A stretch of 64,000 bases of DNA, from NCBI RefSeq assembly GCF_006345805.1, contig NC_043020.1, positions 21,080,001 to 21,144,000 of the forward strand, written 5' to 3'. Each line of letters opens with the position of its first letter. The stretch's first letter is position 1. The translations under genes were made by a program, and so were the position numbers. Positions 12,201 through 57,320 of this stretch are shown piece after piece. The notes under the pieces are model-generated. The model was not told the DNA's origin. It saw only the letters and a list, made by a program, of their open reading frames with translations, and did not search any database. Source of the DNA: Octopus sinensis (Eukaryota).

Positions 12201-13306
12201 TGAAATAACCACCATAGGACAGCAAAAATACCTACTTCAGAAGCAAGGAAAACTGATACAAATAGGTGCAAAATACGAGCAAAACAAAAAATTGTTCTCA
12301 GTATTTAAGGAAGCTGACAAATACAAACAAGAAATCATACCACCTAACAAATATGAAGAAGAAGAAGAAAACACAACAAAAGCTATAAAGCAAATGAAAT
12401 CAAAACTAATACTAGAACAGCAACGGACCATGATAAAACGATGGCAAGAAAAGCCCCTTCATGGCAAATACTGGACTAAACTAAATGCAAAAGAAATAGA
12501 CAAAGAAAAATCCCAGTAGTGGTTAAGAAGCTCAGGACTCAAAGCAGAGACAGAGGGATTTTTAATTGCAGCACAAGACCAAAGCCTCCCCACCAGAAAT
12601 TACCAAAAACATGCAATGAAAAGAAATATAACAAGTAACTGCAGAATATGTGGAGATGGACAAGAAACAATAAATCATATTTTCTCTGGCTGCCCAGTCC
12701 TGGCTAAGAAGGAATATATTCACAGACACGACAGAGTTGGGACCTACATACACTGGAAGCTATGCCAACATTATGGAATAACAACAGAAAAAAATGGTAT
12801 AGGCACACACCAGAAAAGGTCATAGAAAACGAGAAAGCAACCATACTCTGGGATATGCCAATACACATAGATAGAGAAATTAAGGCCAACAGACCAGATA
12901 TAGTTGTCAGAGATCATGAAGAAAAAAATACTTTCTAATTGATGTATCAATACCAGCAGATGACAACGTTTCTCTAAAAGAAATGGAGAAACTTTCAAAA
13001 TACAAAGACCTGGAAATAGAGGTAACTAGAACGTGGAATCTAAAAACAGAAACAATTCCTATCATAGTAGGTGCATTAGGCATGATAAAAAAAATGTTCA
13101 GACAAATACATAACAAAAACACCAGGACTTACAAACACATATAACATACAGAAAATTGCACTACTGGGCACTGCACACATCCTATGCAGAACACTTTCAA
13201 TACAGTAACCATCAGAGCATCACAGCAAATCACAGCACATACCCAAGGCACACAGAGCTGCGCTCGGTAGTGAAGTGAAAGCACGTTATAAAAATAAAAC
13301 TACTGA
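9241..13306 (+). mobile_element. Near full-length R4/Dong-clade non-LTR retrotransposon (RT plus restriction-like endonuclease), inactivated
   Basis: N-terminal RHKWTREEY motif; RT motifs KAPGHDKIPNFWLK, PENYRPITCL, WIDYRKAFDSIPH, RRGIFQG, HLLYMDDLKLY; CCHC knuckle CRICGDGQETINHIFSGC; RLE motif NRPDIVVRD..LIDVSIP..KYKDL. Flanked by (TAA)n at the 5' side and (TGA/TAA)n at the 3' side. Confidence 0.88.
9700..13208 (+). pseudogene. Dong/R4 polyprotein ORF broken by frameshifts and stops
   Basis: ORF pieces 9990-11285, 11249-11602, 11572-11757, 11914-12156, 12292-12519 and 12616-12825 tile one protein ending LGTAHILCRTLSIQ*. Confidence 0.88.
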
Positions 13307-13321
13307 ATGATGATGATGATG

Positions 13322-13353
<32 letters not shown>

Positions 13354-13363
13354 GATAATGATA

Positions 13364-13416
<53 letters not shown>

Positions 13417-13426
13417 AATGATAATC

Positions 13427-13515
<89 letters not shown>

Positions 13516-13565
13516 AATAATAATAATAATAATAATAATATAATAATAATAATAATAATAATAAT
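13307..13565. repeat. Mosaic (TGA)n/(TAA)n microsatellite at the Dong 3' end
   Basis: Direct inspection. Confidence 0.95.
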
Positions 13566-14367: not shown

Positions 14368-14419
<52 letters not shown>

Positions 14420-14599
14420 TACAAACTATGCCATTTTAATCCCGAGCAACGACGGGTATCTCTGATACTGTATGTATTTATATGTCTTGCTTCCATCTCC
14501 TGAGCGCCTTTTAATAATAATACTGTAATTGTTCCTGTTGTTGTTGTTTTTTTGTTTCCCTTTTGGATTAAAATTATATATATATATATTATATATATA

Positions 14600-14651
<52 letters not shown>

Positions 14652-14725
14652 CGAATAAGTAGAATGACCAAAGACTAGCCACACGCTTGAAACTCATAGT
14701 ACCAAGGAGTTTGAATTAAACTGTT

Positions 14726-15002
14726 TGTGAGATGACGTCAGCAGCTGGGGAGTTGACCGGAACTTGGGGCTGACCGGAAGGGACAGCCGTGACGCGCGCG
14801 CAGCGAGCGGGGCATTCTGGCTTTCGAGTCAGGTCGTCGAGGGGTTAAGAAGGGTCATCACGTTGTTAAGGTTGGGTGAAGCAGCTGCCATCTCTAGCGT
14901 TCGGGTCGGGGCTGTGTTGAAGGATCCGTTACCACTGAAGGGTCTCCATCTGAGCGAAGAGAAGGCAGGTGCCGTTACTTCGAATCTCTCGCATACGCCA
15001 CA
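14726..15002 (+). repeat. 5' LTR (277 bp)
   Basis: Matches the 3' LTR with 7 substitutions and one 17-bp insertion (TTGACCGGAACTTGGGG). Confidence 0.95.
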
Positions 15003-15014
15003 AGCTATTTCGGC
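15003..15014 (+). promoter_or_regulatory. Putative primer-binding site AGCTATTTCGGC, complementary to nt 1-12 of tRNA-Phe
   Basis: Directly abuts the LTR-terminal CA. It is the exact reverse complement of GCCGAAATAGCT, the conserved 5' end of metazoan cytosolic tRNA-Phe(GAA). The same 12-mer occurs in copy 2 at 56788-56799. Confidence 0.75.
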
Positions 15015-15037
15015 GCTCCACATAAGACGTCATCACG

Positions 15038-15777
15038 ATGGCAGTGAAAATCAGGATCGCCAGCGACATCATCAGACCCTTTAATGGTGAAGGCGATGTA
15101 GTGGCCTGGATTCGTAAAATCAGGCTGGTGGCAAGACTGCAAGGTATAAGCGATGTGGCAAGTCTTATGGCGCTGTATTTGGAAGGGAGCGCGTTGACGC
15201 TATATCTTGAGATGGACGGGGAAGAACGTCTGAGCAAGGAAAAGATAGAGCAACGTCTGAGGGATGCCTACACAGAGTGTGAATACACAGTTTTTGCTCA
15301 GCTGGGTACGATCAGATGGACGGGAGGACAGGTGGACGAACATGCGGCAGAAGTTCGAAGGTTAGCGACGCTGGCTGGGTTTACAGGAGAAGGGCTGGAG
15401 AGAGCAGCGCGACTGGCGTTTGTAAATGGGTTCCCCGACGATGTAGGGATTCACCTACAACGATTGCCCGGGATTAAAAAGATGGCGCTGAGCGAACTTG
15501 TGACTCAAGTCCGCGTGTTGAGGCGACACTCTGGGCGAAAGGCGATAGTGATAGCGGTGACGGAGGTGCGTAAATACGGACGACGACCGGAGAAAGACGT
15601 ATAGAACCTACCATGCAACGACAGCGGCCGTTCTCAGGTCGGTGTTTTAGATGTCAGGGGTCGCACATGGCGCGGGACTGTACGCAACCGGGGCCCGTTT
15701 GCTATCGATGCAGGCAGACAGGACACATCGCCCGCGGGGAAGTTGCTGCCTCTCGAACTTTCCCTGCAAACGAGTAG
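15038..15777 (+). pseudogene. gag: gag with two CCHC zinc knuckles (frameshift near 15602)
   Basis: ORF 15038-15604, then the shifted frame GRCFRCQGSHMARDC..VCYRCRQTGHIAR. Confidence 0.85.
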
Positions 15778-18420
15778 AGGCGCTTTTGGAGACGCTGCCA
15801 TTAATTGACGTGGAGGCCGAGGGGAAGACGTTGAAGGCCCTCGTGGATACCGGCTGTGCGACCACCCTTGTGACTTCAAGGGTGACGAAGAAATGGAACG
15901 GGGCAAGTAGCATCCGGGCGGTCGACGGCAGCGAAATCCGTTGCAGAGGCAGCAGCAAGGTAGAGATAGTGTTGGGCGGTGCGACGCTAAGGCTGCAGGT
16001 AATTGTGGCTGAACGCGTGATAGATGGGGTTGATGTGGTGATGGGGATGGACGCCATCAACCGCCTCGGTGGCGTCAGCATTGTGGGAGATGAGGTCATG
16101 TTCGGAAGCGTGGGGGCGTCGTGCACTGCGAGTCAGGATCGCCAGAGAGAGCAGAACCCCGCGAGGGACTGCGCTGCGCCGCTTACACCATTGAGGACAA
16201 AGACTTTCAGGCGGCGTTCGATGGTCAGCGGTGGACGATAGAGTGGCGAAGGAAGGACGAGCCCCCGATGCTGAAAAACAGAGTGAGCTGCTACCAGCAT
16301 GCCCTGAAAGGCCACGTCAGGGTTGAGTTTGAAGACGATGTGAAGAGGTCGATCGAGGAAGGGGTCCTTGTCCCGTGGAAGGAGGAGGTAGCGGGCGGAG
16401 TGATACCCCTGATGGCGGTGGTGCAGCCTACGAAGGGAAAAGTCAGACCGGTGCTGGACTTCAGGGAGCTAAACGAGCATATATCGTGTCACACGGGAGG
16501 TGAGGCGACAGACGTTTGTGGCGAGACGTTACATGCGTGGAGACAGTCGACCGAGGCAGCGACGATTGTCGACTTGAAATCGGCATACTTGCAGCTCCAT
16601 GTGAGCGACAAACTGTGGTGCGGTACAAAGGCCGGACGTACTGTTTAACCAGGCTGGGTTTCGGGCTGAATTCCGCTCCGAAGATCATGGCAGCAGTGCT
16701 TAAGTCCGTCTTAGGGAAAGACGGCAAGATTAGAAAAGCCACCAGCTCCTACATTGACGACATTTTGGTGGACGAAACTGTAGTGCCAGCCAACGAGGTA
16801 GTTAGACATCTGGAGAAATTCAGACTGATTGCGAAGCCACCGGAGTCGATGGAAGGAGGAGCCGCGCTGGGGCTGAAGCTGCGAAGAGATAGATCGGGTG
16901 AGTTGGTGTTCTGGAGATGGAATGAAATTCCAGAGCTGAGTTCCAGCGTCAGCAGGAGAGTGCTGTTTTCGGTGTGTGGGAAGTTGGTCGGTCACTACCC
17001 GATCGCTGGATGGCTGCGCACGGCGTGCAGTTACACCAAGAGACGAGCGGAGGGGGAGAGTTGGGGCGACAAGGTGGGAGATGATGCAGGAAATCCTAGA
17101 GAGGACGAGAGCGGAAGACCCAGTCAGGGGTAATTGGTACGTGCCCAAGACGGAATGCGGGACCGTCTGGTGTGACGCTAGCAGTATAGCGATAGGGGTT
17201 GTGTTGGCAATCGAAGGCGCTGCGGTGGAGGACGCGGCCTGGCTTCGGAAAGCAGATGATTTTAACCAAATCAATGTCGCCGAATTAGACGCGGTGCTGA
17301 AAGGGGTGAACTTGGCCCTGAAATGGGGGCTGCAATTGAAACCCGGACGGATTCGGCCACTGTGCTTGGCTGGGTAGGATCGGTGATCACCGGTGAAAGG
17401 AGAGTGCGGACGAAAGGTGTCGCGGAGATGTATATGAAGCGCCGTCTAGGAGTTCTAGGTGAATTGATCGCCGAGTTCGGACTGAAGCTGAACGTGGTTT
17501 TCGTGCCTTCGGAGAAAAACAGGGCGGACGCACTGACCAGGGTGAAAAGAGCGTGGTTGGAAGAACCGGAGGGGGCCCGGAAAGGGATAGCTGCGGTGTG
17601 TCGGTTGGATGACTGAACTGAAGAGACTGTATGCTATGCATCACCTGGGTGTGGACAGGACCCTGTATCTGGCGAAGAAATTTGATGCTGACGTCACTAG
17701 GAGAAGCATCCGGAAAGTGGTCGGAAGCTGCGACCCTGCTCCGTGTGGGCATGAACAGGGAAGCCTTTCGGTGGAGCAGAACTGGAAAAGGCTAGCTGTG
17801 GATGTGACGCACTACCGTCAGGGAATGTATCTCTCCATGGCCGATTGCGGGCCGGGCCGGCTGGCCATTTGGAGGGAATTGAGAACGGACATTGCTGACA
17901 GATCGCGCAGATCTTGAACGGGATATTTTTAGAGAGAGGTCCCGTGGAAGAACTGCTGATGGACAACGGGGCGGCGTTTCGTTCGGAAGCATTGAGGGTT
18001 ATGCTTGATCGGTGGAAGGTGCGTCGCTTGTTCAGAGCAGCGTATAAACCGAGCAGTAACGGGATCGTAGAGAGGCACCATCGGACAGTCAAGGCCATAG
18101 CGGAAAGAGGGCACATTTCGCCGCTTGAAGCAGTTTTTTGGTACAACTTGTCTCCCCGATCTGAACAAACTGAGGAATCTGTGCCGCAGAAAGCTGTATT
18201 TAAATATGAATGGAGGCACCCGAGCAAAGCGCCGGGGGGCCACGAGGAAGAGAAGGGACCCGTTTGCGTGAAAATAGGGGAGGAAGTCTGGGTTAAGCCA
18301 CCAAAGGCGCGCTGTACGTCTCAATGGAGCAGAGGAACGGTGACGGCGGTCAATTCCAGAAACAACGTCTCCGTGGACGAATGCCGCGACACGTCTTGGA
18401 CCTTCGCAGGATTGTCGCTT
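15745..18420 (+). pseudogene. pol: pol (protease, RT, RNase H, integrase), disrupted
   Basis: ALVDTGC (PR); VRPVLDFRELN, DLKSAYLQ, LGFGLNSAP, YIDDILV (RT); WCDAS (RH); LAVDVTH, LLMDNG, NGIVERHHRTVK (IN DDE). Confidence 0.92.
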
Positions 18421-18557
18421 CGACGGACAACGATTGTGGAGAGGGGAGAACGAGGTGCCCAGCTTGAGAAGATCTCGACGCGCAAGGCGCCCTCCCGGTC
18501 GGATGGTGGACTACGACATGGAGTAGAGAGATTGTGATCTTTAAGATCAGGGTGGCG

Positions 18558-18817
18558 TGTGGGATGACGTCAGCAGCTGGGGAGCTGACCGGAAGGGGCA
18601 GCCGTGACGCGCGCGCAGCGAGCGGGGCATTCTGGCTTTCGAGTCAGGTCGTCGAGGGGTTAAGAAGGGTCATCACGTTGTTAAGGTTGGGTGAAGCAGC
18701 TGCTATCTCTAGCGTTCGGGTCGGGGCTGTGTTGAAGGATCCGTTACCACTGAAGGGTCTCCATCTGAGCGAAGAGAAGGTAGGTGCCTTTATTTCGAAT
18801 CTCTCGCATACGCTACA
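18558..18817 (+). repeat. 3' LTR (260 bp)
   Basis: TGTGGG...GCTACA, preceded by a weak purine tract AAGATCAGGGTGGCG. Confidence 0.95.
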
Positions 18818-19399
18818 CTGTTTTGATCTATCTGTGTGTGTGTGTGTGTGTGCGGTGTTCGGGGTCATCACATGCAGTGTGTAGATGTAACTACTGTTGA
18901 AGTGAAAATGGAAAATGTAAGGTTCTCACGTTGGAGATACCACGCGAAAGAGAACACCTAAGAAGAATGAATAATATTTACAAATTTATTTGCCCGCAGT
19001 TGTTAGTAAGACAGCAGTAACTGTACATAGTTGATAGTGACAAGATTTCGCCCGCTGGTTCTTAGTCAGTAGTGTGGAAGTTACGTTCAGCTGGTAGGGA
19101 GAGAAAGAGTAAGGATTGCACTCTACTGACAGAGAGGAAGAAAGGGTAAAGGTGACATGGTCCCTTTGACTCGGCCGAAAGGTGCGCTTCGGTTGCCGAC
19201 AGAAAGTTGAAGAGGCTGGAGAAAGAAATGCCATGTTATATACTCTATGGCCAGGATGTAGGTTAAATCCTAAACAAGTATTTCCCATTAATCATTCAGT
19301 GTGGAGAGGCAAAGACAAAGGAATTTCAGACTTGCTTGACAAGCAACAAGCGATTGGATTCTATAAAGATATATCTACATATTTCTTTAATACTTATTA

Positions 19400-19493: not shown

Positions 19494-19561
<68 letters not shown>

Positions 19562-19669
19562 CATGCATACATAGATATATAATATATATATATATGCACA
19601 TATATATATGTATGTATATATATATATACATAGATATATAATAAATATATATATACACACACACACACA

Positions 19670-19739
<70 letters not shown>

Positions 19740-19765
19740 GATATATAATATATATATATATATGC

Positions 19766-19800
<35 letters not shown>

Positions 19801-19865
19801 TAGATATATAATATATAGATATATGCATATATATATATATAATATATATATATATATATACATAG

Positions 19866-19935
<70 letters not shown>

Positions 19936-19941
19936 GCACAC

Positions 19942-20016
<75 letters not shown>

Positions 20017-21953: not shown

Positions 21954-22060
21954 AGCAGCAAGTAGTTTAGTGAAACGTCATTTATTTAGTATTTCTCTTA
22001 ATTGCACACGTAATTCTCTCACTCTCTAGACAGCAGCAGTTTAAACGTGCGTGTGTGTGT

Positions 22061-22156
<96 letters not shown>

Positions 22157-22454
22157 ATAATATATATATATATATATACATACACATATATATATATATA
22201 TATGTATGTGTGTATGTGTGTATTTTTAAATAACAAATGGAAACTTCTATGTCAAATACCCAAGACGTTGACAGTACAGAGCCGCCAGAAGATCCTGTTG
22301 ACGATGAAGTAGAAGCAAAGCTATCACTTTATGAAAGGTAATGATAATAATAATTCTTTATAATTTTGGCATGGGGGGTGGGGGGCAATAATTTTGAAGG
22401 GAGCGGAAGCCCAGTATTTGACTGGCGCTTTTTTTTTGTTTTGTTTTTCATCGG

Positions 22455-25895: not shown

Positions 25896-26024
25896 TCTTA
25901 GCTCACAATTTCTTTTTTTCAACAGTTGACAACTGAAGTACGCTCGCAAATTAATACTACCAAAACTTAGCGACAGAAAGTAAATTAAAAACCAATTTTA
26001 ATTTATAAAATATAGAATGGAATG

Positions 26025-26609
26025 TACTTCGAAAAATCATAGGTAAATTCCAATTGAAGAAATTGTGTGAGGAGTAAATCGTTATGTATTTATTTGTTTC
26101 TGTTTCCTGTGTATTTTTTTTTTTTTTTAGTAGTGGTTGAAGGTACACTTGCAAAGAGAAAGTAGGAGAAAGTGTGGTAATAGAAGGAGTGAAGCAGTTG
26201 AAATTAGTGAGGCAAATCGTAAAATATTTAGTTTTCTCGAATTTTTGCTTAATTGGGGATCAAATTGAAAAAAATTTATATGCCATGACCCAATCGAATC
26301 TACTTCGAAAAATCATAGGTAAATTCCAATTGAAGAAATTGTGTGAGGAGTAAATCGTTATGTATTTATTTGTTTCTGTTTCCTGTGTATTTTTTTTGAG
26401 TAGTGGTTGAAGGTACACTTGCAAAGAGAAAGTAGGAGAAAGTGTGGTAATAGAAGGAGTGAAGCAGTTGAAATTAGAGAGGCATATCGTAAAATATTTA
26501 GTTTTCTCGAATTTTTGCTTAATTGGGGGTCAAATTGAAAAAACTTTATATGCCATGACCCAATCGAATCTACTTCGAAAAATCATAGGTAAATTCCAAT
26601 TGAAGAAAT
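26025..26609. repeat. Tandem duplication with a 270-276 bp unit, about 2.15 copies
   Basis: TACTTCGAAAAATCATAGG recurs at 26025, 26301 and 26571. Confidence 0.92.
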
Positions 26610-27295
26610 TCTATATTGTACAATTGTATTAAAAACAAACTATGTGAGAGGCAGATAAAATCTGCCTTTTATCATAAGATATCATAAGATATATATATAT
26701 ATATATGACGGGATTCTTTCAGTTTCCGTCTACCAAATCAACTCACGAGGCTTTGGCTGGCCCGAGGCTATAACAGAAGACACTCTTTAAAGTACCTACC
26801 TGTTGTGTATCTACCTGTTGGCAATTTTTCTCCCCCACCCGTTTTGTAGAGGTATTACCCATTTTTCTGGGCTCTTTTCACAGCTATATCCTGTTCGAAA
26901 TTTGCATTAGATTTTGTATGAAAAAAAAGGAAGAGAGTGGGGCTCGTTTGTAGTTTCTAGAGAAAACGTTAAACGTGCCTGAAAAAAAAACATGGTCTTT
27001 CCCCACCTACTAAAAGACACGAAGAACTATGAAACAGAGTGAATAAGTACCAGGGTGGGGGAAAGAAGAGAGAACTAACACTCAATCGTTCTAGAACTTC
27101 CAGAATAAAAACGTAAACACCTGAAAGACTTTCCCTCTATTCATTGCTAAATGTCTCTCCACTCTTCTTCATTGTTAGAAGCAAAGAAGCTAGAAAAGAT
27201 CGATCGTATTTCAGTCTAATTGTCATTGTAAATGACTGAGGCTTTCCTTTCTCTGTCTTTATCGCTTCACTCCTTTTCTCTACGGTTAAGAGAGT

Positions 27296-49909: not shown

Positions 49910-51880
<1,971 letters not shown>

Positions 51881-52049
51881 ACATATAAACATGTATATAC
51901 ACAAATACGTACATACAGAGCAAGATAAAGAGGGCAGCAGTGAACTGAATGGGAAATTATATTACATGTATATATTTGAGAAAAATTAATATAGCAAGTG
52001 AAACTGGAAACTGCCATTTTGTCAGTTGTGATGAGGAAGCTTGCAGGTG

Positions 52050-52340
52050 ATGCAAACAACGGAATAGCCTGCTTGTAAAATTAACCTGTAAGTGACTGAG
52101 CACTCCACAGACATCTTGTGTACCCTTAACATAGTTCTCTGGGAGATTGAGCATGACACAGAATGTGATGAGAATGTGACAAGGCTGGCCCTTTGAAATA
52201 CAAGAACTACTCATTTTTGTCACCTGAGTGGACTGGAGCAACATGAAATAAAGTGTCTTGCTCAGGGGCGCAATACGTTGCCAGGAATCAAACTTATCAC
52301 TTTACAATCGTGAGCCAAATACCCTAATCACTAAGCCATA
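52050..52340 (-). mobile_element. SINE family 3 copy
   Basis: Reverse complement of the 27296-27610 type (GTGACAAGGCTGGCCCTTTGAAATACA..CTGAGTGGACTGGAGCAAC..ACTAAGCCA). Confidence 0.8.
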
Positions 52341-53639: not shown

Positions 53640-56600
53640 TTAAATGCAGAAGGCATCACAACAGTGATGAAGACATTGGTTTCATCATAAACCAGCAAAG
53701 ATCGCTGAGAGCATCAGCAGTAACCATCATAGAGCTGCACTTCGCAGATGATACAGCACTCATATCTAATGAAATCAAGCTCAACAGCTGCTTAGCAGAG
53801 TAGAAACATCAGCTGCTAGAATAGGACTGAACAGAAATGTCAAGAGAACAGAATACATGTCTTTCAACCAATCAAGTGACGCTGAACTGTTTGCTTTGTG
53901 CAGTTCCAAATTGAATGTTGCTGAAGTACTTAGGTGGTTGGGTGAGCAGTTCAGAAGCAGACATCAAGATCAGGAAGGCACAAGCATGGACAACCTGTCA
54001 TAAACTAAAGGAAATGTGGAACTCCAAATTGTCCAGGTAACTCAAAATCAAGCTGTTCATTGTAACTATCAAATCAGTGCTATTATATGGCAGTGGAACA
54101 TGGACATTGACAAAGAACCTATCAAACGGGCTAAATGGATGCTACGAATGGCTCTAAATATGAAATGGCAGCAACATATGACAAACACATGTCTATAGAA
54201 ACCGGCTGGAATTTAGTGAGATGATCAGGCACAAATGGCTTCTTCGCCAGATACAGGGTCCTGTCCACACCCAAGTAATGCATAGCATGCAGTCTCTTCA
54301 GTTCAGAGTCATCTAACCGACACGCTGCAGCTATCCCTTTCTGTCCCTCCTCCGGTTCCTCCAACCACGCCCTTCTCACCCTGGTCAGTGCATCCGCCCT
54401 GTTTTTCTCCGAAGGCACGAAAACCACGTTCAGCTTCAGTCCGAACTCGGCGATCAATTCACCTAGAACTAGACAGTGCTTCACCAACATCTCCGTGGCA
54501 CCTTTCGCCCAAACTCTCCTCTCACCGGTGATCACTGATCCTACCCAGCCAAGCACAGTGGCTGAATCCGTTTGGATTTCGATTGAGCACAGCCTCCATT
54601 TCAGGGCCAAGTTCACCCCTTTCAGCACCGCGTCTAATTTGGCGACATTGATGTGGTTAAAGTCATCTGCTTTCCAAAGCCAGGCCTCGTCCTCCACTGC
54701 AGTGCCTTCGATCTCCAACACAAACCCTATCGTTATACTGCTAGCATCACACCAGACGGTCCCGCATTCCGTCTTGGGCACATACCAGTTCCTCTTGACT
54801 GGGTCTTCCGCTCTCGTCCTCTTTAGGATTTCCTGCATCATCGCCACCGTCCCTTCTCCCACCTTGTCGCCCCAACTCTCCCCATCCACTCGTCTCTTGG
54901 TGTAACTGCATGCCGTGCGCAGCCATCCAGCGATCGGGTAGTGACCGACCAACTTCCCACACACCGAAAACAGCACTCTCCTGCTGATGCTGGAACTCAG
55001 CTCTGGAATTTCATTCCATCTCCAGAACACCAACTCACCCGATCTATCTCTTCACAGCTTCAGCCCCAGTCCAGCTCCTCCTTCCATCGACTCCTGTGGC
55101 TTCGCAATCAGTCCAAACTTCTCCAGATGTCTCACTACCTCATTGGCTGGCACTACAGTTTTGTCCACCAAAATGTCATCTATGTAGGAACTGGTAGCCT
55201 TTCTAATCTTGTCGTCTTTTCTTAGGACGGACTTAAGCATTGCTGCCATGATCTTTGGAACTGAATTCAACCCGAAACCTAGCCCGGTTAAACAGTTCGT
55301 CCGGTCCTAGTACAACAGCTGATATCGTCACAGTTTGTCGCTCACATGGAGCTGCAAGTATGCTGATTTCAAGTTGACAATTGTTGCTGCCCTGGTCAAC
55401 TGTCTCCACGCATGTAGCATCTCACCACAAACGTCTGACGCCTTGCCTTCCGTGTGGAACGATATATGCTCGTTTAGCTCTCTGAAGTACAGCACCGGTC
55501 TCACTTTTCCCTCGTCGGCTGCACCACCTCCATCAGGGATAGCAATCCGCCCACTACCTCCTCCTTCCACAGGACAAGGACCCCTTCCTCGACCAACCTC
55601 TCCACCTCGTCTTCAAACTCGACCCTGGCGTGACCTTTCAGGGTATGCTGGTAGCAGCTCAGTCTGTTTTTCAGCATCGGGGGCTCGTCCTTCCGTCACC
55701 ACTCTATTGTCCACCACTGACCATCGAATGCCGCCTGAAAATCTTTGTCCTCAATGGTGTAAGTGGGGCAGCCCCTCGTGGAGCTCTGTTCTCTCTGGCG
55801 ATCCTGACTCACAGCGTACGACGCTCTCACACCACTATCTCTACATTGCCGCTGCCTTTGCAACAGATTTCGCTGCCATCGACCACCCAGATGCTACTTG
55901 CCCCATTCCATTCCACTTCATCGTCACCCTTGAAATCACAAGGATGGTCATGCAACCCGTATCCATGAGGGCCTTGAACGTCTTCCCCTCAGCCTCGACA
56001 TCTATTAAGAGCAGCGTCTCCAAAAGCACCTCTATTCGTTTGCGGGGAAAGTTCAAGAGGCAGCAACTTCCCCATGGTCATTTCCCTGGTCACAATCACG
56101 GGTGATGTGCCCTGTCTGTCTGCATTGATAGCAGACAGGCCCTGGTTGCGTACACTCCCTTCCCATGTGCAACCCCTGACATCTAAAACACCGGCCTGAG
56201 AATGTCCACTGTCGTTGCACGGTAGGCTTCTTCCCGTCCTTCTCTGGCCGTTGGCCGTCTTTTTGTGCCTCCATTACCACCATCGCTATCGCCTTCCATC
56301 CAGTGTTTCACATCAACACGTGGACTTGAGTCACAAGTTCGCTCAGCGCCTTCTTTTTTCCCCCATGCAATTGCTGCAGTCGAATCCCTATGTCATCCGG
56401 GAACCCACTTACGAATGCCAGTTGCGCTGCTCTCTCCAGCCCTTCTCCTGTAAACCCAGCCAGCATGGCTAACCTTCGAACTTCCGCCGCATATTCATCC
56501 ACCTGTTCTCCCGTCCATCTAATCGTGTCCAGCTTAACAAAGTCTGTGTACTCACTCTCGGTGTAAGCATCTCTCAGACGTTGCTCAATCTTCTCCTCAT

Positions 56601-57320
56601 CCAGACATTCTTCTTTGTCCATCTCAAGATATAGTCAACACACTCCCTTACAAATACAGTGCCATAAGGCTCGCCACGTCGTTAATTCCTAGCAGTCTTG
56701 CCACAAACCTGATTTTACACATCCAGGCCACTACATCGCTGGCGATCCTGATTTTAGCTGCCATCGTGGTGATGTCTTATATGGAGTGCCGAAATAGCTT
56801 GTGGTATATGCGGTAGATTTGAAATAAGGACACCTACCTTCTCTTCGTCGATGCAGACCTCTCCAGTGGTAATGCACCCTTCCATGTGGCCCGACCCGAA
56901 CGCTAGAAATAGCAGCTGCTTTTCCCCTACCTTGACAAAGCGCTCACACGTCCAACTCTGTCGGCTACCCCAATCAAAAAGGGCCAATGCTCCCCTGCTT
57001 GCGTGCACGTCACTCCTGCCCCTTCATCTTCCAGTCAGCTCCCCAACTGCTGACATCATCCCACAATGATCAGGCACAAATGGCTACAACTATCTGGTCA
57101 CTGTGTGCACCACCCTGAGATGGAAGCATCAAAAATTAGTCTTCTTGAACCCACTTCATGGCGATGTAAGAAGAAGAAAATGTCATCACACATTGACAAC
57201 TTGATTGTAGACACTGGCCTGGAATATATCCAGGAATTGAAGCAGTGATGATGAACTGAGAAGTGTGGTGGATAGGTTTTTGTTGCTGCAGTCCAGGTTG
57301 GAACCTGGCCATAATAATGG
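53640..57320 (+). mobile_element. RTE LINE fragment (53640-54240 plus 57066-57320) interrupted by the truncated gypsy copy
   Basis: LHFADDTAL; the frame RNRLEFSEMIRHKWL|QLSGHCVHHPEMEASK is continuous once the insert and one TSD copy are removed. Confidence 0.85.
54241..57065 (-). mobile_element. 3'-truncated Ty3/gypsy relative of 14726-18817 (5' LTR, gag, PR, RT, RH, start of IN)
   Basis: LTR 56800-57065 (TGTGGGATG..CCACA), PBS 56788-56799. Homology stops at the IN codons LYLAK (54241). Flanked by the 20-bp direct repeat ATGATCAGGCACAAATGGCT. Confidence 0.92.

What the first reader, a model, noticed from the sequence alone, without database searches (positions are those of the whole stretch)
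15003..15014. Gypsy element with a primer-binding site complementary to the 5' end (nt 1-12) of tRNA-Phe
Seen: directly after the 5' LTR CA the sequence reads AGCTATTTCGGC, with no TGG and so no tRNA CCA-end PBS. Established: metazoan cytosolic tRNA-Phe begins GCCGAAAUAGCUCAG, so this is the exact complement of nt 1-12. Pairing stops at the LTR edge, because tRNA nt 13 (C) would need G and the sequence has A. The non-canonical priming modes I know are the half-tRNA(iMet) primers of copia/Ty5 and the self-priming of Tf1. Inference: this lineage primes reverse transcription with a very short 5' fragment of tRNA-Phe (10-12 nt, cut in the D-stem). The fragment could be a host 5' tRF, or be made by the element RNase H after the intact tRNA anneals, by analogy with Tf1. 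I am not aware of this priming mode being described, but could not search the literature.
Basis: partly seen in the sequence, partly recalled or inferred. Interest (0 to 1): 0.9.

Follow-up and report, generated by a model that had tools for sequence, protein, structure and literature searches.

The report
Retroelement primer site matching tRNA-Phe's start
A small retrovirus-like mobile element in this octopus sequence, and 13 relatives from molluscs, a bryozoan, an insect, a crab, Hydra and unidentified hosts, carry directly after the left repeat a conserved 12-base site that pairs with the first 12 bases of a transfer RNA instead of its last 18, which points to a way of starting DNA copying that I could not find described.

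Summary
AGCTATTTCGGC (15003-15014) directly follows the terminal CA of a 277-bp 5' LTR. The element is a dead 4.1-kb LTR retroelement with a 5-bp target duplication. A second, diverged, truncated copy on the minus strand has the identical 12-mer at the same junction (56799-56788).

I recovered 15 LTR/internal junctions from this family: Octopus x4, Aplysia, Watersipora, Hydra, Macrosteles, Portunus and six contigs of unknown host. Conservation is complete from the LTR end through position 6 and at positions 10-11, near-complete at 12, and collapses from 13. The LTRs and leaders are otherwise unrelated. Young copies from identified hosts carry the exact reverse complement of tRNA-Phe nt 1-12. 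One unknown-host element carries the exact complement of tRNA-Lys3 nt 1-12.

No LTR holds a Tf1-style self-primer, no TGG-type site exists, and in several elements gag starts 0-1 nt after the 12-mer. The best reading is minus-strand priming from the 5'-terminal 12 nt of a tRNA, freed by a cut in the D-stem. That step is inferred, not shown.

"Gypsy" is a doubtful label: the RNase H is of the cellular/retroviral type and the nearest solved RTs are retroviral. I found no published report of this priming mode.

The parts
14721..14725 (+). Left copy of the 5-bp target-site duplication CTGTT (copy A)
   Evidence: CTGTT lies immediately before the 5' LTR and again at 18818-18822.
14726..15002 (+). 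5' LTR of copy A (277 bp, TGTGAG...CCACA). It carries a 17-bp extra segment relative to the 3' LTR.
15003..15014 (+). 12-nt primer-binding site AGCTATTTCGGC, the reverse complement of tRNA-Phe nt 1-12
15038..15777 (+). gag remnant. The capsid-like ORF is 15038-15604. Two degenerate CCHC-like knuckles lie in another frame at 15613-15777.
   Evidence: translations; frames. There is no Pfam hit for the first ORF.
15651..16241 (+). Aspartic protease remnant (DTG at 15846-15854)
   Evidence: (gag-asp_proteas, Asp_protease_2, RVP).
16121..17133 (+). Reverse transcriptase remnant, split over two frames (RPVLDFRELN at 16445-16474, YIDD at 16750-16761), followed by DUF7047 (about 16951-17085)
   Evidence: Intact relatives hit RVT_1 only weakly.
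16976..17616 (+). RNase H remnant, split over two frames. It is of the cellular/retroviral type in intact relatives (RVT_3, RNase_H).
17609..18537 (+). Integrase remnant, split over two frames
   Evidence: weak rve hit. Relatives hit Integrase_H2C2 plus rve.
18543..18557 (+). Polypurine-tract-like motif AAGATCAGGGTGGCG abutting the 3' LTR. The motif AGATCA(A/G)GGGG is shared by relatives.
18558..18817 (+). 3' LTR of copy A (260 bp, TGTGGG...CTACA)
18818..18822 (+). Right copy of the target-site duplication CTGTT
56800..57065 (-). 5' LTR of copy B (diverged, about 76-83% identical to the LTR of copy A)
56788..56799 (-). The identical 12-nt site AGCTATTTCGGC of copy B, directly after the LTR's CA. 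The leader after it differs from copy A at four positions, mostly CpG-type changes.
54240..56787 (-). Internal part of copy B (gag ATG at 56764; PR, RT, RNase H). It is truncated at the equivalent of nt ~2954 of copy A, and no 3' LTR was found.

Best explanation
The 12-mer is the minus-strand primer-binding site of a compact (~4 kb) animal LTR retroelement lineage. It pairs with the 5'-terminal 12 nucleotides of a host elongator tRNA: the whole 5' strand of the acceptor stem, nt 8-9, and the first three bases of the D-stem. That tRNA is tRNA-Phe(GAA) in the octopus and in every identified host with a young copy, and probably tRNA-Lys(UUU) in one sub-lineage.

Proposed cycle; every step below is inferred. 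(1) Gag/nucleocapsid melts the tRNA and anneals nt 1-12 to the site (predicted duplex -18.7 kcal/mol). (2) The tRNA is cut between nt 12 and 13, because nt 13 (C) always faces the A of the LTR's terminal CA. My preferred agent is the element's own RNase H acting on the RNA duplex, as in Tf1. A host nuclease or a ready-made 5' fragment are the alternatives. (3) RT extends the new 3'-OH into U5-R. (4) Plus-strand strong-stop synthesis copies the primer and runs off at tRNA nt 1. This explains why conservation ends exactly at position 12. (5) The 12-nt copy mediates the second strand transfer.

Shown here: the position of the site, its exact complementarity, and the conservation profile. Confidence 0.6 applies to 'a tRNA 5' end is the primer'. 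Within that, cleavage by the element's own RNase H is roughly an even bet.
For: Position: the 12-mer abuts the LTR's terminal CA in all 15 junctions. The LTR ends are fixed independently by 5-bp target duplications in 7 elements.

Conservation: the 5' LTRs share nothing beyond their terminal bases, and leaders are unrelated across Mollusca, Bryozoa, Arthropoda and Cnidaria. Yet positions 1-6 and 10-11 are invariant, 12 is 14/15, and 13 onward is variable.

Active copies: Hydra (LTRs 100% identical), Macrosteles (99.5%), Aplysia and O. sinensis (98.6%) all carry the exact tRNA-Phe complement.

tRNA sequence: the tRNA-Phe 5' end is identical in human and Drosophila.

Variation: it is confined to positions 7-9, which correspond to tRNA nt 4-6 in the middle of the acceptor stem, the part that differs between tRNAs. 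Element L132 reads AGCTATCCGGGC, the exact complement of tRNA-Lys3 nt 1-12. Its closest sampled relative, L137, shares the CC-type middle.

No alternative site: there is no TGG, gag starts 0-1 nt after the 12-mer in four elements, there is no self-primer in any LTR, and there is no other complementarity of 8 nt or more to tRNA-Phe within -200..+250.

Precedent for the principle: the copia 'half-tRNA', Ty5 internal cleavage and Tf1 tRNA-independent priming (PMC5371799), and self-priming (PMC4600332).
Against: No experiment and no small-RNA or cDNA data were available, so priming is inferred from sequence alone.

The tRNA-Phe of octopus, Aplysia, Hydra, Macrosteles, Portunus and Watersipora was not read.

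Five unknown-host elements and the old Portunus copy have other triplets at positions 7-9 (ATC, TCC, CCC, CGC, CTA) that I cannot match to a known tRNA. If those hosts have the canonical tRNA-Phe, then only AGCTAT...GGC is constrained and the tRNA reading weakens.

The tRNA-Lys3 match is 1 of about 6 variants, each with a 1/64 chance, so it is suggestive but not decisive.

From my own knowledge, 5' tRNA fragments are usually 14 nt or longer, and no nuclease is known to cut at nt 12/13.

tRNase ZL, a natural 12-bp ruler, cuts one base too far and is inhibited by long 5' leaders (PMC9141469).
Confidence: 0.6

Rival explanations
1. Same site and same tRNA, but the primer is a ready-made host 5' tRNA-Phe fragment of 10-12 nt that is packaged and annealed. 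No cleavage occurs on the template.
For: The pairing is limited to nt 1-12, and no other part of tRNA-Phe finds a partner within -200..+250. An intact tRNA therefore has no additional anchor.
Against: From my own knowledge, the described 5' fragment classes are 14-16 nt or longer, and a 12-mer ending in the D-stem is not a known abundant species. A free 12-mer gives little specificity for packaging. No small-RNA data were available.
Confidence: 0.15
2. The 12-mer binds the tRNA 5' end, or another factor, for a purpose other than priming, such as packaging, dimerisation or translation control. Reverse transcription would then start by another route.
For: Function was not tested. Positions 7-9 tolerate variation in some elements.
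Against: The site occupies exactly the place that defines a primer-binding site, the first base after U5, in every element. In four elements nothing else lies between the LTR and gag. No alternative primer site or self-primer was found.
Confidence: 0.08
3. The primer is a different cellular RNA whose 3' end happens to read ...GCCGAAAUAGCU, and not a tRNA fragment.
For: Only the complementarity is observed, not the identity of the partner.
Against: Conservation ends exactly where the tRNA begins. The variants keep the tRNA-universal U8-A9-G10-C11-U12 and vary only at acceptor-stem positions 4-6. One variant equals tRNA-Lys3. I know of no such RNA.
Confidence: 0.05
4. Tf1/Tj1-type self-priming: the 5' end of the element's own transcript folds back on the site.
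For: The length (11-12 nt) and position of the site resemble Tf1 and Tj1 (PMC4600332).
Against: In nine elements the best LTR window gives only 8-9 Watson-Crick pairs of 12, at inconsistent positions. A self-primer would be free to co-vary with its site, yet the same 12-mer is kept across phyla with unrelated LTRs.
Confidence: 0.02
5. Chance resemblance or a meaningless relic.
For: None.
Against: There are 15 independent junctions, including copies with identical LTRs. An exact 12-mer is expected about 0.008 times per window.
Confidence: 0.01

Closest known systems
Half-tRNA priming of copia (Drosophila) and Ty5 (yeast): a 5' fragment of initiator tRNA-Met made by internal cleavage
   Same: The primer is not the tRNA's CCA end. 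It is a 5'-derived fragment that needs an internal cut, and the site lacks TGG and abuts the LTR (PMC5371799).
   Different: Here the site pairs with nt 1-12 (acceptor 5' strand plus the start of the D-stem) of an elongator tRNA (Phe, possibly Lys). In copia/Ty5 it pairs with the anticodon stem-loop region of tRNAiMet. The fragment would be about 12 nt rather than about 39 (my own knowledge for the copia length). The whole fragment is paired, so plus-strand copying runs off the tRNA's 5' end. The element lineage also differs (PR-RT-RH-IN order, not copia order).
Self-priming of Tf1 (S. pombe), Tj1 and the Tf1/sushi group
   Same: An 11-12-nt site lies directly after the LTR. The primer is the 5'-terminal 11-12 nt of an RNA and must be released by an endonucleolytic cut after duplex formation. 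In Tf1 the RNase H domain makes the cut (my own knowledge; the self-priming principle is in PMC4600332).
   Different: The paired RNA is a host tRNA, not the element's own 5' end. No LTR complement exists, and the site is identical across unrelated LTRs.
Canonical 3'-end tRNA priming of retroviruses and of Ty1/Ty3
   Same: A host tRNA is used, the site is the first sequence after U5, and a polypurine tract precedes the 3' LTR.
   Different: The opposite end of the tRNA is used. The site is 12 nt rather than about 18, and has no TGG/CCA pairing. Such elements would not be recognised by tools that search for tRNA 3' ends, or by 3'-CCA tRNA fragments, which match the site of tRNA-primed elements (PMC7472051).
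Recently named animal lineages: Odin retrotransposons (sea anemones) and Kuafuorterviruses/Troyka
   Same: These are animal LTR retroelements outside the classical superfamilies. Odin combines a retrovirus-type RNase H with no env.
   Different: Kuafuorterviruses have I/V/LADD in the RT (PMC11673190), and their Troyka members induce 3-bp target duplications per a Repbase report title in that paper's reference list. This family has YIDD and 5-bp duplications. Odin was found only in sea anemones after a screen of 3,624 animal genomes (PMC9040795), whereas this family is in molluscs, arthropods, bryozoans and Hydra. Neither paper mentions a primer site.

Membership tests
LTR retroelement (Ortervirales-type, integrase-bearing) | Two direct LTRs with TG...CA ends and a short target-site duplication | tested here: met
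   Copy A has LTRs at 14726-15002 and 18558-18817 and the duplication CTGTT. 5-bp duplications are present in 6 relatives.
LTR retroelement (Ortervirales-type, integrase-bearing) | [quoted passage not shown] | tested here: met
   In the window copy all reading frames are broken.
   RVT_1 is hit only weakly (26-37 bits). A family profile against all PDB chains finds foamy-virus, HIV-2, HIV-1 and MLV RTs first (E 6e-9 to 3e-5), with no Ty3 chain among the best 60. No phylogeny was made.
   The RNase H region hits RVT_3 (PF13456) and RNase_H (PF00075), preceded by DUF7047. No Gypsy-type RNase H family appears in any of the 6 proteins scanned or in the precomputed lists.
BEL/Pao (Belpaoviridae) | Pao-type peptidase A17 and the DUF1758/DUF1759/DUF5641 domains (feature list from my own knowledge) | tested here: not met
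   The protease hits gag-asp_proteas, Asp_protease_2 and RVP. None of the BEL/Pao families appears.
Kuafuorterviruses / Troyka | I/V/LADD in place of YXDD (paper text); 3-bp target duplication (Troyka members, from a Repbase report title in that paper's reference list) | tested here: not met
   YIDD is at 16750-16761, and duplications are 5 bp. Definition from PMC11673190.
Canonical 3'-end tRNA primer site | Site begins with TGG (complement of CCA) and continues as the complement of a tRNA 3' end | tested here: not met
   There is no TGG between the LTR and gag in copy A. In four relatives gag starts 0-1 nt after the 12-mer.
Tf1-type self-priming elements | Site complementary to the first ~11 nt of the element's own transcript (within the LTR) | tested here: not met
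   There is no run of 11-12 pairs. The best is 8-9 Watson-Crick pairs of 12 (one 10-pair run only if G-U is counted), at varying positions in 9 LTRs.
copia/Ty5 half-tRNA priming | Site complementary to the anticodon stem-loop region of initiator tRNA-Met | tested here: not met
   The complement is to nt 1-12 of tRNA-Phe. The class definition is from PMC5371799.
copia/Ty5 half-tRNA priming | Primer generated by internal cleavage of the tRNA | not testable with these tools
   This needs biochemical work or sequencing of replication intermediates.

The most novel reading that the evidence does not exclude
A pan-metazoan, so far unclassified lineage of very small LTR retroelements (gag; PR-RT-DUF7047-RNase H-IN; about 4 kb) starts reverse transcription from the 5'-terminal 12 nucleotides of an elongator tRNA (Phe; Lys in one branch), released by a cut in the D-stem. 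This would be a third non-canonical priming mode beside half-tRNA and self-priming. It would be invisible to tRNA-3'-end search tools and to 3'-CCA tRNA-fragment surveillance.
Probability: 0.55. Interest if true: 0.9.

Novelty: new variant of a known kind. Interest (0 to 1): 0.85.

Why it matters
Every textbook account has LTR retroelements and retroviruses primed from the 3' CCA end of a tRNA, with two known exceptions: half-tRNA(iMet) and self-priming. A conserved site for the first 12 nt of tRNA-Phe would add a third exception.

It would pose a concrete enzymological question: what cuts a tRNA at nt 12/13? Apparently active copies in Hydra and a leafhopper offer material for testing.

It also has practical consequences. 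Annotation tools that look for tRNA 3' complements will report these elements as lacking a primer site. Host defence by 3' tRNA fragments, which target the classical site (PMC7472051), would not see them.

The family itself is widespread in marine and other invertebrates, is among the smallest autonomous LTR elements, and has a retrovirus-type RNase H. It appears to lack a name.

Tried and rejected
(1) I scanned the metagenome collection for ACAAGCTATNTCGGC. The 120 hits were bacterial chance matches. None had the family's gag or pol next to the match; one locus, L026, had a weak RT-like hit upstream that I did not examine.

(2) A protein-pattern scan of IMG/VR found no relative.

(3) Two Oratosquilla loci (L001, L003) had no LTR pair and no site-like motif. 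They are probably fragments.

(4) Contigs L131, L133 and L135 lack the 5' region.

(5) I looked for a host tRNA-Phe gene in the window and in 19 loci with ARAGORN, and in the window with Rfam. None was found.

(6) A search for a second tRNA-Phe contact, as in Ty1/Ty3/HIV, within -200..+250 found none.

(7) Membership in Odin or Kuafuortervirus was rejected.

(8) tRNase ZL as the cutting enzyme is attractive, because it measures 12 bp. But it cuts after the next unpaired base, is inhibited by 5' leaders longer than 8 nt, and works worst when the 3' trailer begins with C (PMC9141469). I kept it only as a minor possibility.

(9) Literature searches found no report of such a site. These covered the exact 12-mer, PBS + tRNAPhe, PBS + '5 end of tRNA', 'complementary to the 5' + PBS, self-priming/half-tRNA, and copia tRNA fragment. 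The library lacks most subscription journals and Repbase Reports, so absence is not proof.

Housekeeping: the script wrote the interval of copy A to a scratch file for a self-BLAST. Only coordinates were printed, and all scratch files were deleted.

Full report
**What is in the window**

Copy A spans 14726-18817 on the + strand (4,092 bp).
- The 5' LTR is 14726-15002 (277 bp) and the 3' LTR is 18558-18817 (260 bp). They are about 97% identical and have TGTG...ACA ends.
- The 5' LTR has a 17-bp extra segment relative to the 3' LTR.
- The element is flanked by the 5-bp target duplication CTGTT (14721-14725 and 18818-18822).
- A purine-rich motif, AAGATCAGGGTGGCG (18543-18557), abuts the 3' LTR.
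The gag ATG follows at 15038, with no TGG in between.

The coding region is dead. The pieces lie in alternating frames:

| Piece | Coordinates |
|---|---|
| gag | 15038-15604 |
| two degenerate CCHC-like knuckles | 15613-15777 |
| protease (DTG at 15846) | 15651-16241 |
| RT (YIDD at 16750) | 16121-17133 |
| DUF7047 | about 16951-17085 |
| RNase H | 16976-17616 |
| integrase | 17609-18537 |

Copy B is a second copy on the minus strand, 76-89% identical to A.
- Its LTR is 57065-56800.
- It carries the identical 12-mer at 56799-56788, and its gag ATG is at 56764.
- It is truncated near 54240.
- Between A and B the leader after the 12-mer has four substitutions in its first 24 bases, mostly CpG-type. 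The 12-mer, which itself contains a CpG, has none.

**Host and family**

- The best protein matches are Octopus bimaculoides and O. sinensis (up to 86% identity), so the window is octopus DNA.
- Relatives with the same architecture occur in Argonauta, Aplysia, Oratosquilla, Palaemon, Portunus, Trinorchestia, Penaeus, Macrosteles (an insect), Watersipora (a bryozoan), Trichuris and Hydra.
- They also occur in hundreds of unnamed contigs of about 4 kb from ENA, JGI and Logan assemblies.
- Intact relatives have a gag of about 230-260 aa and a single pol of about 900-980 aa. The whole element measures 3.8-4.4 kb in seven of the nine LTR-flanked copies (3.2 kb in the degraded Watersipora copy).

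**Is it a Gypsy element?**

The gene order fits, but two tests do not.
- The RNase H region hits the cellular/retroviral families RVT_3 and RNase_H, preceded by DUF7047. It does not hit the Gypsy-type RNase H families.
- A profile of 12 family members searched against all PDB sequences finds foamy-virus, HIV-2, HIV-1 and MLV RTs first, with no Ty3 chain in the best 60. RVT_1 is hit only weakly.

Other named groups are also excluded.
- It is not a Kuafuortervirus. Those have I/V/LADD in the RT, and their Troyka members make 3-bp duplications (PMC11673190).
- It is not BEL/Pao by domain content.
- Odin elements were reported only from sea anemones (PMC9040795).

I therefore call it an unclassified, compact LTR retroelement with a retrovirus-type RNase H. 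A proper phylogeny was not made.

**The junction in relatives**

I recovered 15 LTR/internal junctions, shown here as the bases before the site | the site | the following bases. 'LTR identity' compares an element's own two LTRs.

| Element | Junction | LTR identity / note |
|---|---|---|
| Octopus A | CCACA\|AGCTATTTCGGC\|G | about 97% |
| Octopus B | CCACA\|AGCTATTTCGGC\|A | no 3' LTR |
| O. sinensis a | CTACA\|AGCTATTTCGGC\|A | LTR pair 1.6 kb apart |
| O. sinensis b | TCACA\|AGCTATTTCGGC\|A | 98.6% |
| Aplysia | CTGCA\|AGCTATTTCGGC\|G | 98.6% |
| Hydra | TTACA\|AGCTATTTCGGC\|A-ATG | 100% |
| Macrosteles | CCACA\|AGCTATTTCGGC\|ATG | 99.5% |
| Watersipora | CTACA\|AGCTATTTTGGC | 94%; CpG-type change, still a G-U pair |
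| L007 | TAACA\|AGCTATTTCGGT | 87% |
| Portunus | TTACA\|AGCTATCTAGGC | 91% |
| L006 | CCACA\|AGCTATATCGGC\|ATG | 99.6% |
| L134 | CTACA\|AGCTATTCCGGC | single LTR in contig |
| L137 | CCACA\|AGCTATCCCGGC\|A-ATG | single LTR in contig |
| L138/L139 | TTACA\|AGCTATCGCGGC | tandem array sharing one LTR |
| L132 | CTAAA\|AGCTATCCGGGC | single LTR in contig |

In seven elements a 5-bp target duplication fixes the LTR ends independently of the alignment.

Per-position information across the 15 junctions:

| Position relative to the site | Information (bits) |
|---|---|
| -1 to +6 | 2.0 |
| +7 to +9 | 0.84-0.96 |
| +10, +11 | 2.0 |
| +12 | 1.65 |
| +13 | 0.76 |
| beyond +13 | 0.07-0.6 |

The 5' LTRs share only their terminal ACA and a weak bias in the few bases before it.

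**What it pairs with**

- GCCGAAATAGCT is the 5' end of cytosolic tRNA-Phe(GAA) in human (primer in PMC10505166).
- It is the same in Drosophila (5' probe GCTCTCCCAACTGAGCTATTTCGGC in PMC7038984). Identity between fly and human makes the same sequence in other bilaterians very likely. I could not read any host's gene.
- All young copies from identified hosts carry the exact complement.
- The variable positions 7-9 face tRNA nt 6-4, the middle of the acceptor stem. The invariant AGCTA faces U8-A9-G10-C11-U12, which many tRNAs share.
- L132's site is the exact complement of tRNA-Lys3 nt 1-12, GCCCGGATAGCT (PMC8715211).
- L132's closest sampled relative, L137 (56% aa identity), has the same site but for one base.

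The tRNA-Lys3 match has roughly a 1-in-10 chance of arising among six variants. It is therefore suggestive of a primer switch, not proof. The other variants (GAU, GGA, GGG, GCG, UAG at tRNA nt 4-6) come from unknown hosts or from an old copy, and remain unexplained.

**Rivals tested**

- Self-priming: in nine LTRs the best window gives 8-9 Watson-Crick pairs of 12, at inconsistent places.
- Canonical site: there is no TGG. In four elements nothing lies between the 12-mer and gag.
- Second tRNA contact: none of 8 nt or more within -200..+250.
- Chance: excluded.

**Mechanism (inferred)**

- The 12-bp RNA duplex is predicted at -18.7 kcal/mol. Opening nt 1-12 of the unmodified tRNA costs about 9 kcal/mol.
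- The base before the site is always A, while tRNA nt 13 is C. The primer's 3' end therefore cannot lie beyond nt 12, and the tRNA must be cut there.
- The closest precedent is Tf1, where the element's RNase H cuts an RNA duplex after nt 11 (my own knowledge; principle in PMC4600332).
- copia and Ty5 show that internally cleaved tRNAs can prime (PMC5371799).
- A 5'-terminal primer explains the sharp 3' boundary of conservation: plus-strand synthesis copies the primer and runs off at tRNA nt 1.
- If, as in retroviruses, the copied primer contributes to the progeny site (PMC7472051), the site would be reset to the tRNA sequence each cycle. That would explain its invariance.
- With the site abutting CA, the U5 end of the linear DNA would be blunt. 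This is also an inference.
- tRNase ZL measures 12 bp, but it fits poorly.

**Novelty**

None of the literature searches returned a report of a primer site complementary to a tRNA 5' end. The exact 12-mer occurs only in northern-probe or oligonucleotide lists (the Drosophila probe was read). The library is incomplete, so I rate this a new variant of a known kind (tRNA-dependent priming of LTR retroelements), with high interest.

Noticed in passing
L002 1-1749 (Octopus sinensis): An LTR pair only about 1.6 kb apart (97.5% identical) has the same 12-mer after the first LTR and an A-rich leader. It is probably a non-autonomous (TRIM/LARD-like) derivative that uses the same primer site. The left LTR runs off the locus.
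   Followed up: partly
L131-L135 (GTDB genome contigs): Eukaryotic retroelement contigs of this family are binned in bacterial MAGs (Granulosicoccaceae binchicken_co345_16, Planctomycetota SCS4bin.42, Pseudomonadota P01_B01_bin.22). This is contamination of the MAGs. L132 and L134 have identical terminal overlaps of 141 and 127 bp, that is, a repeat-collapsed assembly.
   Followed up: partly
L138 1-7941 (JGI 3300071644): Tandem arrangement pol - LTR - gag - pol - LTR - gag - pol, with identical site regions at 2311 and about 6172. Neighbouring elements share one LTR.
   Followed up: no
window 14763-14800: The 5' LTR of copy A has 17 extra bases (GACCGGAA... repeated) relative to the 3' LTR, giving 277 versus 260 bp.
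   Followed up: no
position +13 of the 15 junctions (window 15015): The base after the 12-mer is A in 10 of 15 elements (0.76 bit). This may only reflect A-rich leaders and the nearby start codon, or a non-templated or leader-derived base. It is unexplained.
   Followed up: no
window 18543-18557; same place in L002, L005, L006, L007, L008, L129: A shared motif, AGATCA(A/G)GGGG(N)2-3, lies directly before the 3' LTR. It is a conserved polypurine-tract region, with a GATC core upstream of the G-run.
   Followed up: partly
window 56912-56905 (-) and L130 about 5854: Copy B and the Macrosteles element each have a second, partial, same-sense copy of the site motif (GCTATTTC / TATTTCGG) 113-135 nt upstream inside the LTR. 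This is probably chance.
   Followed up: no
window 51130-52059 (-): A mechanical ORF through a microsatellite-rich stretch ends in ...[10 protein letters not shown]. This resembles the conserved RT motif of non-LTR (LINE) retrotransposons, so a LINE fragment probably lies at about 51130-51230.
   Followed up: no
window 13265-13561; 26016-26667; 14400-14660; 19530-20010; 22040-22220: There is a 9/12-nt periodic tandem array, a ~270-bp tandem repeat (3 units, 94-98% identical), and long (AT)n/(TATATA)n microsatellites that flank the insertion site of copy A.
   Followed up: no
family as a whole: At about 3.8-4.4 kb with a pol of about 900 aa, these are among the smallest autonomous LTR retroelements. 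Pfam knows the segment between RT and RNase H only as DUF7047.
   Followed up: partly
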